A stretch of DNA of 63,871 nt, counting the filler, from Octopus bimaculoides (lineage: Eukaryota): assembly GCF_001194135.2 (NCBI RefSeq). It is 7 parts of 6 records of this genome, joined end to end, with 100 filler letters (N's around TTAATTAATTAA, not from the genome) between each part and the next. Parts side by side here need not be neighbours in the genome. Positions count along the whole stretch, not along the records: positions 37,246 to 47,920 come from NC_068987.1; 6 more parts are not named here. One strand, given 5' to 3'. Shown here in pieces: positions 39,124 to 43,901 of this stretch. A program made the position numbers and the translations under genes. The notes under the pieces are model-generated. The model had not been told where the DNA came from, did not search any database, and saw only the letters and a list, made by a program, of their open reading frames with translations. How positions within the stretch are numbered: position 1 is the first letter of the stretch; every line of letters starts with the position of its first letter.

Positions 39124-39961
39124 TTATGCGTTATTCAGGAACTGTAGGTCCTTGTGAAGATCTTCTAGGAGAGTTTGGAAATTAGGGCTCATGTCAACAT
39201 CATCAGATTCATTCTCCTCGCTGGAATCGAAGCGACAAGGCGGAAAATGATTCGAGTCGGGGGACAAATCCTTGCAACTATGTAATCTTGTGTCAGGTAC
39301 AATGTATTGCTCGTGCCATTCGTCATTGAAGAGATCTGTAACCTTCTGATGGTTTGATAAATCACTATCACCGAAAGTGATATTCTGAGCTGTTTCAGGA
39401 CAGTAACGCTTATTCGGCAGCAGATCAGGTAGACATATTTCAGAATTTGAACGTTTTATTTTCAGACTAAAATCTGAAGTGTCTGACATTAAGGATTCAT
39501 TAGGTGACAAAGAGCTACAGTTATCTGAAGCTGATGGACTATTGAAATTTTCTATGATGGGAATGTCAATATTAGAACTGCATATGTTATCCGCGCTGTT
39601 TACATTGACCAAATTTTCATAAGAAGAACCGTTTGCCTTGTCACAATACCACGATTCATACGATTTCGAAACTGTTGCCTCAGGGATTTCGTGTTGACTG
39701 CAACATACATCATAACTGATCGACTCATTACCAACGAGAACTGCTGGGGGGTTAAAAATGTCCCCGCTGCGTGTACCCTCATCGATGATACTCAAAGGGG
39801 AGTTTTCTTCGCTGTTGAAAGTTTCTCTATATTTACTTGGGTATTCGAACGATGATTGGTGATAACTGCTTGACTTCATGAATTTGCTTTCTTTAAAATC
39901 AGTGGTAAACTTATAGAGATGTCTGTCAACTTTCAACAATTTGCCTTTTTCGATGTAATAC
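39124..39961 (-). CDS. ETS-domain transcription factor, terminal exon (end of ETS domain + acidic Ser-rich tail)
   Basis: ctgcAG acceptor. AG|G completes Arg, then YYIEKGKLLKVDRHLYKF and about 260 further open codons to TAA (ORF 39124..39939 in the track). Confidence 0.85.
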
Positions 39962-40632
39962 CTGCAGAAGAGAAATATATAATATTACTATTATTGTTTC
40001 TGTCGTTAAAAAGAAGTGAATATACTCCAAGGATGAAACTCTCGGAGAATATGTGCAAATGCAAACAAAGAAAGTAATTGCGAGTCAACTAATGTTGTAG
40101 GAAAGAATCGCCAGACGGATTCTTCAAGCCGAACCAACCGGCAGGAGACTTAGAGGCAGACGAAGAATGAAAATGGTTGGATAATAATTTAATATCATTA
40201 GTTTGACAGAATCGTTAGCAATGTTTCTTCTAGCTTTACGTTCTGAGTACAAATCCCGCCGAGGTCAACTTTGCCTTTCATCTTTTCGGGGGTCGATAAA
40301 ATAAATATCAGTGGAGCACTGGGGTTGACGCATTCGACTACAACCCCACCCCCCCCACAAAATATCAGGCTTTGTATTTATAGCACAAACGGTTATTATG
40401 TTGATACTCAAAGAAGGAAAAATTATAGAATAAAAGTATAACGTTTCGGACATAGTCATTCGTCAGATATTAGAAGAAAGTCCAAGGAGAGGTAAAAAAG
40501 AGAGGCAAGGAAATGAAACAGAAAGGAGAGTACCAACAAAAAAACAAATGGGTTAAGTTCACACATCCACCCTCTACATATACAAAAGAAATTGATTAAC
40601 AAGTAATGAGATTAACAATATGCACAACTCAC

Positions 40633-40834
40633 CTTAATGCCCTTCTTAGTTTGTTATGATCCATACTGTAGTTGTTCTTTTCTCTGCCCCATAAAGTAGC
40701 AAGAGTAATTAAGGAACAGATACGGAACAAGCCTTCACTGCGGTTCTCCCATCTGATTATTGCGTTGTTGTCTCTATTTTTCTCGAGGAGATGCAAGAGA
40801 AAGTGAAAGAGTCGTTTTCCATGGCCAGAACCAC
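40633..40834 (-). CDS. ETS-domain transcription factor, ETS core exon
   Basis: tttttAG acceptor, GTGAGT donor. Encodes GSGHGKRLFHFLLHLLEKNRDNNAIIRWENRSEGLFRICSLITLATLWGREKNNYSMDHNKLRRALR, which aligns to ELF3/EHF/ELF5 ETS helices 1-3. Confidence 0.88.
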
Positions 40835-41630
40835 CTAAAAAAACACAAAACAAAAACAAAAATGATTATATAGATTGATGTGGTGTTTGTCAACACTGTT
40901 TCTGGGCATGTGTGTGTATGTGTGTGTAATTATGAGGAATTATGATAATCACGCGTGTATGTGATTTGTTCTCTGCGTACGTTTCACAACTGTGGTTATT
41001 TGCAACTTCTGCATTAAATGTTCTAAGTGCAATTGGATGCTGAACCACAACGGATCATTAGGGGAACACTTTGTTGTATTATGTTATACAGATGTAACGC
41101 ATTATGTTACAAAGATCATAATTTCTTCTACAGGAAGCAAAATGGAGGGAAATACTTTGTATGGAGTTCTAAACTCATTAGTAGCAGTCGTACATCTAAC
41201 TATACACACAAGATACACTATACTATACTATACCATATATATATATATATATANNNNNNNNNNNNNNNNNNNNNNNNNNNNNNNNNNNNNNNNNNNNNNN
41301 NNNNNNNNNNNNNNNNNNNNNNNNNNNNNNNNNNNNNNNNNNNNNNNNNNNNNNNNNNNNNNNNNNNNNNNNNNNNNNNNNNNNNNNNNNNNNNNNNNNN
41401 NNNNNNNNNNNNNNNNNNNNNNNNNNNNNNNNNNNNNNNNNNNNNNNNNNNNNNNNNNNNNNNNNNNNNNNNNNNNNNNNNNNNNNNNNNNNNNNNNNNN
41501 NNNNNNNNNNNNNNNNNNNNNNNNNNNNNNNNNNNNNNNNNNNNNNNNNNNNNNNNNNNNNNNNNNNNNNNNNNNNNNNNNNNNNNNNNNNNNNNNNNNN
41601 NNNNNNNNNNNNNNNNNNNNNNNNNNNNNN

Positions 41631-41663
<33 letters not shown>

Positions 41664-41726
41664 GATTGTGCTGCTAACTATGTAATTATTAAAATACGGA
41701 AAAAGTTAAGTAATGAGATAACTTAC

Positions 41727-41861
41727 TAGTTTCATAATCTGAAATGGCTGAGGATATTTGGCAATCATTATGATCGTTGTTATTCTCAAGTAAAAGAGAC
41801 AATTCCGGGATACCAACTTCACGTTTGGCATTTTCTGCCTCTTGTTCTTCCCGCTTTTCAA
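41727..41861 (-). CDS. ETS factor, coding exon 2
   Basis: ttttgtctttacAG acceptor, GTAAGT donor, 135 bp, phase 1-1, no stops. Encodes (V)EKREEQEAENAKREVGIPELSLLLENNNDHNDCQISSAISDYET(S) and joins both neighbours in frame. Confidence 0.75.
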
Positions 41862-42132
41862 CTGTAAAGACAAAAAGCCCATGCTTATTTCTTGAAGTGT
41901 ACCTTTGTATAGCTCTAAATAACTATCAAGATTTAGAAAGAAAAAGAGGGAGAGAGAAAGGTAGAGAGAGAGAGAGAGAGAGTGTGTGTGGTAGAAGAAA
42001 AGAGAGAGAGAAAGTTGTGATGTTCATGATTTTCTAAAGGGACAAACTTTGATTTTTGAAATGACTTATTGCTAAATTTGTATGAGATTCTGGAAAATGA
42101 CCAAAATCTTTCCTGTTTTTTTCCCCCCAAAT

Positions 42133-42520
42133 GAAGGCGCAAGTATGACCGTGTGGTTAAGAAGCCCGTTTTGCAACCGTGGGTTTCAGGTTCAGTCCCA
42201 CTGTGAGGCACCTTGAGCAAGTTTCTTCCACTATAACATAAGGGTGAATAATGCCTTGTTGGTAGCCGGAAACTATGTGGAAACCCGTGGTATATGTGTG
42301 TGTGTGTGTGCATGTGTATTTTCGTATCTGCGTTTGAGTGCCTTTGCTTGGCAACCGTTGTTCGTTGTAATCTAACGGTTCGGCAAAATAATCCGATGGA
42401 ATAGTACTACACTTAGAAAGAAAATACTAGGTGGAGAGCGATCTGTTCGACTAAAATTCTTCAAGGTGGTGCCCTAGCATGGCCGTAGTCCAATGACTGA
42501 AACAAGTAAACGAAAAAATA
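42133..42520 (+). mobile_element. SINE family B, near full length, in the ETS intron
   Basis: ggcgcaagtatgaccgtgtggttaag...ggttcagtcccactg head and family B tail. Reverse heads also at about 11225, 14455, 18595, 24770. Confidence 0.7.
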
Positions 42521-43244
42521 AAAGGCATAAAAGATATGAGTTAGGATTAAGGCCTAACTTCCAAGCCTAACAACAGGATATGGATTTAATATGTATTTCG
42601 TCTCTGGCACAGTTCTCTCCCCTTGTTTAACACTCTTTCTATCATGTCCATTATACGCCATGTTTTCTTTTGCACCAGCACTCAACTTTTGCCACAAACT
42701 ATGCGTTTAAAAACTTTTTTTAAACCAGGCATATATTTCAGTTCACTATATAAACCATCACATTGATTTATAGCATGAATATCATCGGTGACTTCCAAAG
42801 AAGGCAAAGTGTTAAATACTTATAAACGAGAAGAAGATTGGAAGAAATCTTCAAACTATTGTTTAGCGCAAAGTATGTAATAAGTGATAACTTGGCCCTG
42901 GTGAGATGCATGATTGCGGGGGATGAATGAATAGAACAAAGAGGCTTAGTGCAAGGATAGTCTCTGCGTTACTCCGTTTCTGCCATTACCAAGTCTCGAA
43001 ATTTTGATGAATTTCTTTGCACAACCAACCGTTTCAAGAATGCAGCAGAAAAAACCGCGAATGACAATATTGAATCCGTCCGTGACACCAACGATGATCA
43101 ACTGCTATGGATATTACTGTTTTTGAATTTGTATAAATGCCGTCCATCTTCACAACCATTGGATTGCAATGCCTATCTTCTTCCACCTATTTCACTATTG
43201 AGGTCCTGGTTCATGGATCGTACTTAGTCTGGATCCTCCCCCAC

Positions 43245-43362
43245 AACCTTACCGCCATGGGTGACCCTGCCAGGAACATGAAGCTCCCTGCGGCATAGCT
43301 TGTGAGGTCATTGGAACACGCAAGCCCTCTTACCACGACAAGGTGACGATCCGAGAGGGTAC
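43245..43362 (-). mobile_element. 5' UTR fragment of an RTE-clade LINE
   Basis: Minus strand reads tcaccttgtcgtggtaagagggcttgcgtgttccaatgacctcacaagctatgccgcagggagc...ggcagggtcacccatggc, typical of RTE (Rex3/Expander-like) 5' ends. Confidence 0.55.
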
Positions 43363-43848
43363 CCTGCACTTACTGATTATCGTATTTGATGGCATAAAAG
43401 ACACATAGATATATTAGATGCAACGCAATTTACACAGCGCATATTTAGGAAAAAGTTTTAAGTGTATTAAAGCTTATGGTAAGACTAAGGGTAGTTTTTT
43501 TGAAACATTTTTTGAAGAAAGATGTGTGTTGTACATGCCATAAAAAACGATAATTATAATTAAAATAGAAATCAATCACACAGAAGCAATTTTTCCGAAG
43601 GACGAAAAATTCAACGCAAGTCAATTTGAACTTAGTTCTATTACCACCCAATTTAATTTTTTAAATCACCCCAAATTTAAAGAATCATTTGCCATGTATT
43701 ATAGTGAACTATTTTCAACAGCTGTTTCATCAAGAATAAACACCATTCGTAATATATGGGAAATGTTAGTGTAGTATCTAGAGAAATAAAATCTTTTGTG
43801 CTACTATATCCAATACAACGTTCACAGCATACACAGATATATACTCAC

Positions 43849-43901
43849 CAAAACGATCCCAGGAAAAAACAAAATCCTCCATGATATTGTTTAAACCAAA
43901 T
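43849..43901 (-). CDS. ETS factor, exon with probable start codon (ATG at 43882)
   Basis: tctctcaacAG acceptor, GTGAGT donor, good Kozak context (atcATGG), encodes MEDFVFSWDRF + phase 1. Total CDS 34+135+202+838 = 1209 nt = 402 aa + stop. Confidence 0.7.

What the first reader, a model, noticed from the sequence alone, without database searches (positions are those of the whole stretch)
39124..43901. Divergent ETS transcription factor with an unusual architecture
Four exons with canonical splice sites and matching phases give a 402-aa protein: a short acidic N-terminus, an ETS domain at about residues 58-142, then about 260 aa rich in Ser/Asp/Glu ending in an amphipathic-looking FQTLLEDLHKDLQFL. 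The domain is closest to the ESE subfamily (WENRSEGLF and KNNYSM vs ELF3 WENRHEGVF and EHF WEDRSEGVF/KNNSSM). ESE proteins normally have an N-terminal PNT domain and a C-terminal ETS domain; here there is no recognisable PNT and the ETS domain comes first. It may be a lineage-specific, fast-evolving ETS paralogue (inference). The ORF track shows only two disconnected pieces.
Basis: partly seen in the sequence, partly recalled or inferred. Interest (0 to 1): 0.8.

Follow-up and report, generated by a model that had tools for sequence, protein, structure and literature searches.

The report
Annotated octopus-specific divergent ETS factor gene
The four-exon gene is real and encodes a divergent ETS-family DNA-binding protein found so far only in octopuses, but it is already in the public Octopus bimaculoides annotation and in a 2023 mollusc ETS census, so it is a correct reading of a known, uncharacterised gene, not a discovery.

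Summary
On the minus strand, four GT-AG exons with matching phases give a 402-aa protein. It has one Pfam Ets domain (aa 64-142, 72.5 bits) and no PNT domain. The assembly gap lies inside intron 2 and hides no exon.

The model matches RefSeq XP_014787929.1 (Octopus bimaculoides, "Ob-ETS-14" in PMC10664356) in length, pI, instability index, aliphatic index and GRAVY. Orthologues with the same exons and architecture are annotated in O. vulgaris (CAI9725215.1, "ETS homologous factor isoform X3", 84% identity) and O. sinensis.

The gene is under purifying selection: dN/dS is 0.24 overall and 0.11 in the ETS domain. A search of 1.84 billion representative proteins found no closer relative outside octopuses.

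It is not nearest to ERF, the label the 2023 paper gave it. However, ESE-like ETS genes without PNT are already reported as common in molluscs.

Small additions: five recognition-surface residues not seen in 141 related ETS domains, and loss of an invariant DNA-contact arginine in O. vulgaris and O. sinensis.

Verdict: already known, low interest.

The parts
46971..47038 (-). Upstream 5' exon (E0), probably 5'UTR or an alternative N-terminal coding exon. Its 5' boundary is not determined.
   Evidence: It encodes IPLVDIIWTTLKIVKIGSDNNI, matching aa 37-58 of the O. vulgaris isoform P0003 at 21 of 22 residues. The donor is AG|GTAAGT. Nucleotide identity to O. vulgaris and O. sinensis is 95-99%. 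In the window the frame has an upstream stop and no ATG.
43849..43901 (-). Exon 1: acceptor at 43902/43901, ATG at 43882, 34 coding nt (aa 1-11).
   Evidence: The splice sites and the ATG are conserved in O. vulgaris and O. sinensis.
41727..41861 (-). Exon 2 (aa 12-56): acidic N-terminal region.
   Evidence: A helix at aa 9-22 is predicted with low confidence. dN/dS is 0.62.
41254..41630 (.). Assembly gap inside intron 2; no coding content.
   Evidence: It is flanked by (GT)n and (TA)n. The orthologous gap-free DNA is microsatellite-rich intron, and the exon 2/3 junction peptide is identical in the orthologues.
40633..40834 (-). Exon 3 (aa 57-123 plus two bases of codon R124): ETS helices H1-H2 and most of H3.
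   Evidence: Pfam Ets. AlphaFold2 pLDDT is 90-98. The phase-2 split of the Arg codon is at the same place as in a sea-urchin ESE-type gene.
39898..39961 (-). Start of exon 4 (aa 124-145): end of recognition helix H3 and the beta-hairpin wing of the ETS domain.
   Evidence: Nucleotide identity across species is 95-97%.
39187..39897 (-). Exon 4, tail (aa 146-382): Ser/Asp/Glu-rich and predicted disordered, with conserved short blocks.
   Evidence: pLDDT is below 50. Blocks conserved in three species include RETFNSEENSPLSIIDE, SKSYESWYCDK and SDFSLKIKRSxSEICLPDLLPNKR. dN/dS is 0.25-0.46. There is no homologue outside octopuses.
39124..39186 (-). C-terminal amphipathic helix (aa 383-401, NFQTLLEDLHKDLQFLNN), the final Ala codon and the TAA stop.
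   Evidence: The helix is predicted at pLDDT 82-91. It is the most constrained part of the tail, with dN/dS 0.08, and is conserved in three species.

Best explanation
This is the already annotated Octopus bimaculoides ETS-family gene XP_014787929.1 (Ob-ETS-14). It is a functional transcription-factor gene found so far only in octopuses.

Shown:
- A canonical winged helix-turn-helix ETS domain lies at aa 58-145.
- It is followed by about 240 aa of acidic, Ser-rich, low-confidence (probably disordered) tail that carries conserved short blocks.
- The protein ends in a confidently predicted helix.
- The whole gene is under purifying selection.

Inferred:
- In O. bimaculoides both DNA-contact arginines of helix H3 are intact, so the protein most likely binds a GGA-core site.
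- The tail and the terminal helix most likely act as a regulatory or cofactor-binding (activation or repression) module.
- Conserved Ser-Pro sites and a KIKRS-x3-ICL block might mean kinase docking or a nuclear localisation signal. This is untested.

By descent the domain is closest to the ESE group (ELF5, EHF, ELF3), from which it has diverged strongly. It lacks the PNT domain, as many mollusc ESE-clade genes do.
For: Gene model and domain.

Identity with RefSeq: length 402, pI 4.84, instability 54.29, aliphatic index 68.88 and GRAVY -0.767 all equal the values for Ob-ETS-14 = XP_014787929.1 in supplementary file 5 of PMC10664356. The O. sinensis 179-aa orthologue P0004 matches Os-ETS-13 in the same way.

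Orthologues: O. vulgaris CAI9725215.1 is 84% identical over 100% of the length. All four exons and their splice sites are conserved in O. vulgaris and O. sinensis, and the loci are collinear. Exon 4 is also open in a third species (L001).

Selection: NG86 dN/dS is 0.24 overall, 0.11 for the ETS domain, 0.25 for the tail and 0.08 for the C-terminal motif. Divergence is 0.059 at 0-fold sites against 0.237 at 4-fold sites.

Fold: pLDDT is 90-98 for aa 61-145, with the H1-S1-S2-H2-H3-S3-S4 order. Foldseek hits are all ETS domains, with target-normalised TM-scores of 0.75-0.90 among the leading hits (0.53-0.90 over all 50 listed).

ESE affinity:
- PDB phmmer scores are ELF5 65.3, EHF 58.9, ELF3 53.4 and ERF 36.1 bits.
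- The nearest named representatives are shark EHF and ELF5-like proteins.
- In neighbour-joining bootstraps the octopus clade joins ELF5/EHF/ELF3 before ERF/ERG/FEV/FLI1 in 199 of 200 replicates.
- The intron just before the ETS domain has the same phase and lies within two codons of the corresponding intron of a sea-urchin ESE-type gene; the phase-2 intron in the H3 Arg codon is at the same position.

Restriction to octopuses: among 2841 hits in 1.84 billion representatives, only two octopus proteins exceed 73 bits, apart from one artefact.
Against: - No transcript reads were available to me. Splicing rests on annotated orthologue proteins, conserved splice sites and the match to RefSeq.
- Identity to any non-octopus ETS domain is only 37-44% and nearly flat across subfamilies. 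The ESE placement is therefore a long-branch placement against a limited labelled reference set of 7 sequences from 3 subfamilies.
- A published Bayesian tree places the gene in the ERF subfamily.
- Five near-invariant ETS positions carry residues seen in 0 of 141 related domains. The invariant Arg124 is Gly in O. vulgaris and O. sinensis. Canonical GGA binding is therefore not assured across the clade.
- The roles proposed for the tail and the terminal helix are inference only.
Confidence: 0.75

Rival explanations
1. It is a fast-evolving true orthologue of ERF/ETV3/ETV3L, as labelled in PMC10664356. On this reading the N-terminal ETS domain plus long tail is inherited from that subfamily.
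For: The architecture (N-terminal ETS domain, long C-terminal tail) is the ERF/ETV3 one (established knowledge). The paper's Bayesian tree and BLAST typing class Ob-ETS-14 as ERF and Os-ETS-13 as ETV3L. Helix H1 reads LFHFLLHLL, compared with LWHFILELL in ERF.
Against: The ERF ETS domain scores only 36.1 bits against the model, versus 65.3 for ELF5. ERF itself is closest to FEV, ERG and ETS1 (113-124 bits) and far from ESE proteins (61-66 bits), a similarity profile unlike the model's. Only 1 of 200 neighbour-joining bootstraps joins the octopus clade to ERF/ERG/FEV/FLI1 first. The tail matches nothing outside octopuses, ERF-family tails included. The paper aligned whole proteins, which may reward shared domain position (inference).
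Confidence: 0.1
2. The model is incomplete: a PNT-coding exon exists upstream (beyond the piece or in the second gap), and the real protein has the standard ESE layout.
For: An upstream 5' exon does exist, and the frame between acceptor 43901 and the ATG is open. O. vulgaris has a 464-aa isoform with 65 extra N-terminal residues, whose first exon lies beyond the end of the piece. A gap (43954-44325) sits just upstream of exon 1.
Against: The 464-aa isoform has no PNT domain. No Pfam domain appears in any minus-strand frame of 41631-47920. A PNT profile built from 44 PNT domains finds nothing in six-frame ORFs of the window piece, of 26 kb of O. sinensis or of 38 kb of O. vulgaris, which includes 21 kb upstream of the ATG and the gap-equivalent DNA. 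Even with a PNT domain, the 257-aa tail after the ETS domain would remain non-standard.
Confidence: 0.05
3. The gene is losing, or has lost, canonical DNA binding and is drifting. It would then be a relaxed or decaying duplicate, or a protein that acts without sequence-specific GGA recognition.
For: The residues W66F, Y116H, S120R, Y127I and I131K are each seen in 0 of 141 related ETS domains. Invariant R124 is Gly in O. vulgaris and O. sinensis. O. sinensis carries a 1-nt deletion that truncates the product to 179 aa. Coding exons are no better conserved at the nucleotide level than the flanking non-coding DNA.
Against: dN/dS is 0.11 in the ETS domain and 0.24 overall, and 0-fold sites diverge four times less than 4-fold sites. 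The ORF and all splice sites are intact in O. bimaculoides and O. vulgaris. R121 and R124 are intact in the window species. The O. sinensis deletion is a GG-to-G change in an otherwise 99.2% identical CDS and may be an assembly error.
Confidence: 0.1

Closest known systems
RefSeq XP_014787929.1 (Octopus bimaculoides; 'Ob-ETS-14' in PMC10664356)
   Same: Length is 402 aa, and pI, instability index, aliphatic index and GRAVY are identical to the window model to the printed precision. It is the same protein, so the gene is already annotated and catalogued.
   Different: Nothing detectable. The paper labels it ERF subfamily, which my domain comparisons do not support.
O. vulgaris CAI9725215.1 / CAI9725214.1 ('ETS homologous factor isoform X3') and O. 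sinensis XP_029639090.1 (Os-ETS-13)
   Same: They are orthologues. The loci are collinear, with the same four coding exons and splice sites and the same N-terminal ETS domain plus tail plus C-terminal helix. Protein identity is 84%.
   Different: R124 is Gly, and there is a 3-codon deletion in the tail. O. vulgaris has a longer annotated isoform (+65 aa, no PNT). The O. sinensis product is cut to 179 aa by a 1-nt deletion.
Vertebrate ESE subfamily (ELF5, EHF, ELF3)
   Same: These are the best sequence matches of the ETS domain (65, 59 and 53 bits; 39-44% identity). The motifs WENRSEGLFR and KVDRxLYKF resemble the ESE versions. A sea-urchin ESE-type gene has the same phase-2 intron in the H3 Arg codon and a same-phase intron within two codons of the one just before the ETS domain.
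   Different: There is no PNT domain. The ETS domain is near the N-terminus and not at the C-terminal end. A 257-aa tail follows it. Five recognition-surface positions carry unique residues.
PNT-less ESE-clade ETS genes of molluscs (PMC10664356) and the PNT-less sea-urchin ESE-type protein XP_041471489.1
   Same: They combine an ESE-like ETS domain with no recognisable PNT domain. The paper says nearly half of invertebrate ESE members lack it. The sea-urchin protein P0040 shows only Pfam Ets.
   Different: In P0040 the ETS domain is still C-terminal (aa 413-501 of 512), whereas here it is N-terminal. The paper did not place this gene in that group.
ERF / ETV3 / ETV3L subfamily
   Same: The domain order is the same: an N-terminal ETS domain and a long, low-complexity C-terminal regulatory region (established knowledge; published label).
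   Different: ETS-domain similarity is among the lowest of all subfamilies (36 bits). No tail homology is found. The tree does not join them.

Membership tests
ETS-domain transcription factors (Pfam PF00178) | Match to the Ets profile above the curated cut-off | tested here: met
   72.5 bits against a cut-off of 26.9, E 3.5e-20, profile positions 1-80 of 81.
ETS-domain transcription factors (Pfam PF00178) | Winged helix-turn-helix fold (three helices, four-stranded sheet) | tested here: met
   The AlphaFold2 model with a 66-sequence alignment gives H65-79, E83-87, E92-95, H98-108, H116-128, E132-136 and E139-142 at pLDDT 90-98. Foldseek matches PDB ETS domains only, with RMSD mostly 1.0-2.5 A and target-normalised TM 0.75-0.90 among the leading hits.
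ETS-domain transcription factors (Pfam PF00178) | The two invariant H3 arginines that contact the GGA core (Ets-1 R391 and R394; established knowledge) | tested here: met
   R121 and R124 are present in the window protein. The R124 column is Arg in 141 of 141 related domains. It is Gly in the O. vulgaris and O. sinensis orthologues.
ETS-domain transcription factors (Pfam PF00178) | Sequence-specific binding to GGA(A/T) DNA | not testable with these tools
   This needs EMSA, protein-binding microarray or SELEX.
ESE subfamily (ELF3/ELF5/EHF) | ETS domain closest to ESE members | tested here: met
   ELF5, EHF and ELF3 are the top three PDB sequence hits. The nearest named representatives are EHF or ELF5-like. 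In neighbour-joining bootstraps the clade joins ESE before ERF/ERG/FEV/FLI1 in 199 of 200 replicates. The margin in identity is small (39-44% against 37-39%).
ESE subfamily (ELF3/ELF5/EHF) | N-terminal PNT (SAM_PNT) domain | tested here: not met
   There is no SAM_PNT in the protein, in the longer O. vulgaris isoform, or in six-frame translations of the upstream DNA of three species.
ESE subfamily (ELF3/ELF5/EHF) | ETS domain at the C-terminal end of the protein | tested here: not met
   The ETS domain is at aa 58-145 of 402, with 257 aa following it.
ESE subfamily (ELF3/ELF5/EHF) | Orthology shown by a full phylogeny or by synteny | tested here: inconclusive
   Only a neighbour-joining tree with 7 labelled references was possible. 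The intron in the H3 Arg codon is at the same position and phase as in a sea-urchin ESE-type gene, and the intron before the domain has the same phase within two codons, but their specificity to ESE was not tested. Synteny could not be examined.
ERF/ETV3 subfamily | N-terminal ETS domain with a long C-terminal regulatory region | tested here: met
ERF/ETV3 subfamily | ETS domain closest to ERF/ETV3 | tested here: not met
   ERF (7jsa) scores 36.1 bits and ranks about 39th of 67 PDB sequences. The ERF sequence was verified and its own neighbours are FEV, ERG and ETS1. Bootstrap support is 1 of 200.
ERF/ETV3 subfamily | Homology of the C-terminal region to ERF/ETV3 tails | tested here: not met
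   A full-length phmmer search against 1.84 billion representatives matched the tail only to the octopus fragment P0002 and one low-complexity protein.

The most novel reading that the evidence does not exclude
This is an octopod-specific ETS paralogue whose DNA-recognition surface has been remodelled. Five substitutions are unseen in 141 related ETS domains, and the invariant GGA-contacting Arg is lost in the O. vulgaris/O. sinensis lineage, while the domain stays under purifying selection. On this reading it has acquired a non-canonical DNA specificity or a DNA-independent role, having arisen from an EHF-like ancestor by loss of the PNT domain and gain of a new tail.
Probability: 0.25. Interest if true: 0.5.

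Novelty: already known. Interest (0 to 1): 0.2.

Why it matters
It matters little as a discovery. The gene, its exon structure and its PNT-less layout are already in RefSeq, in the O. vulgaris annotation and in a published mollusc ETS census.

Two modest points could interest people working on cephalopod gene regulation or ETS evolution:
- The published ERF/ETV3L label, and the speculation built on it that "ERF genes occur only in Octopus" and relate to its nervous system, are not supported by the ETS domain itself. The domain is ESE-like.
- The clade shows unusual changes on the recognition helix, including loss of an otherwise invariant arginine in two species, while remaining under constraint. 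This makes it a small natural test case for how ETS DNA recognition can drift.

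Tried and rejected
- The word-indexed homologue search returned only two octopus hits. The exhaustive representative search was needed to see the rest of the family.
- P0005 (120 bits, 601 aa) looked like a next-closest relative. It is a SPDEF-like protein with its ETS domain repeated three times, so the score is summed. I rejected it as a relative.
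The P0009 gene was too long to fetch.
- The first AlphaFold2 run, with a 3-sequence alignment, was useless (mean pLDDT 31.8). The 66-sequence alignment worked.
- Foldseek does not separate the ETS subfamilies.
- Pfam cannot take DNA references that contain stop codons, so the plus-strand frames were not scanned. No plus-strand ORF longer than about 100 aa exists apart from microsatellite or N-run artefacts.
- The first bootstrap script timed out. I reran it on 65 taxa.
- Literature searches for 'ETS homologous factor' with octopus, and for SRR11869385, found nothing. The species of L001 stays unknown.
- There are no tRNA genes or Rfam families in the piece. The repeat finder gave only microsatellites.
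- The conserved intron-1 element has no unusual RNA fold.
- The pseudogene reading is disfavoured by dN/dS and by intact splice sites.

Full report
**1. The observation**

- The exons are 43882-43849, 41861-41727, 40834-40633 and 39961-39124.
- All four are bounded by AG acceptors and GT donors, with incoming phases 0, 1, 1 and 2.
- Pfam finds a single Ets domain at aa 64-142 (72.5 bits against a cut-off of 26.9, E 3.5e-20) and nothing else.

**2. The gap**

The N run 41254-41630 lies wholly inside intron 2.
- Exons 2 and 3 join in phase.
- The junction peptide DYETS|GSGHGKR is identical in the annotated O. vulgaris and O. sinensis proteins.
- In the two gap-free relatives the corresponding DNA is about 720-750 nt of intron rich in (GT)n and (TA)n, with no exon.

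A second gap (43954-44325) lies upstream of exon 1. Its equivalent in the relatives is 530-550 nt of microsatellite-rich non-coding DNA.

**3. What the gene is**

The word-indexed protein search returned two hits.
- One was O. vulgaris CAI9725215.1, named 'ETS homologous factor isoform X3' (399 aa, 84% identity, full coverage).
- The other was a 259-aa fragment covering the last exon.

Cluster look-up added a 464-aa O. vulgaris isoform.

A 2023 census of mollusc ETS genes (PMC10664356) lists Ob-ETS-14 = XP_014787929.1 from Octopus bimaculoides. Its values are 402 aa, pI 4.84, instability 54.29, aliphatic index 68.88 and GRAVY -0.767. My model gives exactly these five numbers. The O. sinensis product P0004 (179 aa) matches Os-ETS-13 = XP_029639090.1 in the same way.

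**4. Conservation**

I fetched the O. sinensis and O. vulgaris loci.
- The whole 10.7-kb piece is collinear with both at 84-92% nucleotide identity over the aligned collinear blocks.
- All four coding exons and their splice sites are conserved.
- NG86 dN/dS between the window and O. vulgaris is 0.24 overall. By region it is 0.62 for the N-terminal part, 0.11 for the ETS domain, 0.25 for the tail and 0.08 for the last 22 codons.
- Against a third species (L001, a Logan genomic contig of exon 4) the tail gives 0.46.
- Divergence is 0.059 at 0-fold sites and 0.237 at 4-fold sites.

The gene is a constrained, functional gene, with a tail that evolves fairly fast.

**5. Is a PNT domain hidden?**

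No.
- Pfam finds no domain in any minus-strand frame of 41631-47920, and none beyond Ets in the 464-aa isoform.
- A PNT profile I built from 44 PNT domains finds nothing in six-frame ORFs of the window piece, 26 kb of O. sinensis or 38 kb of O. vulgaris. An ETS profile used as a control finds the gene in each.

There is an upstream exon. Window 47038-46971 encodes the peptide used by the long O. vulgaris isoform, ends in AG|GTAAGT and splices to the acceptor at 43901. In the window its frame has a stop and no ATG, so it is probably 5' UTR. It is the best-conserved stretch of the piece, at 95-99%.

**6. Which ETS subfamily**

Evidence that the domain is ESE-like:
- Against PDB sequences the order is ELF5 65.3, EHF 58.9, ELF3 53.4, ELF2 52.1 and ELK1 51.5 bits, with ERF at 36.1.
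- I verified the ERF domain sequence against 7jsa. Its own neighbours are FEV, ERG and ETS1 (113-124 bits), with ESE proteins at 61-66 bits. That profile is unlike the model's.
- An exhaustive search of 1.84 billion representatives gave 2841 hits. Only two octopus proteins stood out. Every other hit scored 73 bits or less, except P0005, an artefact with three copies of a SPDEF-like domain.
- The nearest named representatives are shark EHF and ELF5-like proteins.
- In a neighbour-joining tree of 65 domains, the octopus clade met ELF5/EHF/ELF3 before ERF/ERG/FEV/FLI1 in 199 of 200 bootstraps.
- A sea-urchin ESE-type gene (XP_041471489.1, which also lacks a Pfam PNT domain) has a phase-1 intron just before the ETS domain, within two codons of the octopus one, and a phase-2 intron splitting the Arg codon of LSRAMR|YYY at exactly the octopus position.

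Caveats on that evidence:
- Identities are almost flat, at 44% for EHF and 39% for ERF.
- The labelled reference set is small.
- I did not test whether these intron positions are specific to ESE.

My reading is that the domain is ESE-like on a long branch. The ERF/ETV3L label in PMC10664356 is not supported by the domain.

**7. Is the architecture unusual?**

Only relative to vertebrate ESE proteins.
- PMC10664356 states that many mollusc sequences cluster with ESE but lack PNT, and that nearly half of invertebrate ESE members do so.
- PMC2789578 notes that ELF, ELK, ER71 and ERF members have only an ETS domain.
- An N-terminal ETS domain followed by a long tail is the normal ERF and TCF layout (established knowledge).
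- Of the 62 nearest non-octopus relatives scanned, only 10 carry a Pfam PNT domain, although many of those are fragments.

**8. Structure and likely mechanism**

With a 66-sequence alignment, AlphaFold2 gives the following:
- a canonical ETS fold at aa 61-145 (pLDDT 90-98);
- a low-confidence tail (pLDDT below 50);
- a confident C-terminal helix at aa 383-401 (pLDDT 82-91).

Foldseek matches only ETS domains.

The tail carries blocks identical in three species: RETFNSEENSPLSIIDE, SKSYESWYCDK, SDFSLKIKRSxSEICLPDLLPNKR, DSNHF and the terminal helix.

I infer a GGA-core-binding factor whose disordered acidic tail and terminal helix recruit partners. Conserved Ser-Pro sites and a basic block followed by I-x-L might be kinase-docking or nuclear-localisation elements. 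None of this was tested.

**9. Derived residues**

Among columns conserved in at least 85% of 141 related domains, the octopus proteins carry W66F, Y116H, S120R, Y127I and I131K. Each is seen in 0 of 141.

R124, which is Arg in 141 of 141 and equivalent to Ets-1 R394, is Gly in O. vulgaris and O. sinensis. The cause is an A-to-G change in the split codon: TTAAG|G becomes TTAGG|G. This is the only part of the finding a specialist might find mildly surprising.

**10. Verdict**

However, the gene is already annotated and catalogued, and its PNT-less state is a described feature of mollusc ETS genes. It is already known and of low interest. The residual novel reading is a remodelled recognition helix in an octopod-specific paralogue.

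Noticed in passing
window 41254-41630 and 43954-44325: Both assembly gaps are bounded by dinucleotide microsatellites ((GT)n/(TA)n and (TA)n/(GA)n). The gap-free O. vulgaris and O. sinensis equivalents are about 720-750 nt and 530-550 nt of microsatellite-rich DNA, so the estimated gap lengths (377 and 372) are probably too short.
   Followed up: yes
window 40633/39961 (codon R124); L004 26308-26309/27432; L003 14720-14721/15851: The invariant ETS arginine (Ets-1 R394 equivalent; Arg in 141 of 141 related domains) is Gly in O. vulgaris and O. sinensis, through an A-to-G change in the codon split by intron 3. The ETS domain still has dN/dS 0.11.
   Followed up: partly
L003 about 16010 (O. sinensis exon 4): A 1-nt deletion (GG to G) shifts the frame, giving the 179-aa product annotated in GenBank and RefSeq (XP_029639090.1). 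The CDS is otherwise 99.2% identical to O. vulgaris. This is either an assembly error or a very recent truncation, and the data cannot tell which.
   Followed up: partly
window 43221-43420 (intron 1); also 45721-45820: These single-copy non-coding stretches are 97-98% identical to both other species. The background is about 90% and the coding exons are 82-93%. They have no Pfam hit, no Rfam hit and no unusual RNA fold (z -0.9 and +0.2). They may be conserved regulatory elements.
   Followed up: partly
window about 40224-40340 (intron 3) and about 42150-42520 (intron 1): These are interspersed repeats. The intron-3 element of about 105-125 nt has at least 18 further copies in 38 kb of the O. 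vulgaris locus and 6 in the O. sinensis locus. The intron-1 element has several diverged copies. Neither contains a tRNA gene or an Rfam family.
   Followed up: partly
whole CDS versus flanking DNA, window 37246-47920: Divergence at 4-fold-degenerate sites from O. vulgaris (0.237, 28 of 118) is more than twice the aligned intron and intergenic divergence (about 0.10). Tail-coding DNA is less conserved than the surrounding non-coding DNA. This is unexplained. Possible causes are constraint on the non-coding DNA, composition or CpG effects, or small numbers.
   Followed up: no
literature: PMC10664356, Table 1 and supplementary file 5: The paper's 'ERF subfamily, found only in Octopus' includes this gene (Ob-ETS-14) and its O. 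sinensis orthologue (Os-ETS-13, listed as ETV3L). By ETS-domain similarity these are ESE-like, so that claim and the nervous-system speculation built on it look doubtful, at least for these entries.
   Followed up: partly
window 38169 (minus strand), 954 nt downstream of the stop: This is the first canonical AATAAA downstream of the stop. DNA from 39120 to about 38620 is 90-95% conserved, which suggests a 3' UTR of roughly 1 kb.
   Followed up: no
L005 (Lytechinus variegatus CM031023.1), gene 1001-12926: A sea-urchin ESE-type protein (XP_041471489.1, 512 aa) also lacks a Pfam PNT domain. Its phase-2 intron in the H3 Arg codon is at the octopus position, and its phase-1 intron before the ETS domain lies within two codons of the octopus one.
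   Followed up: partly
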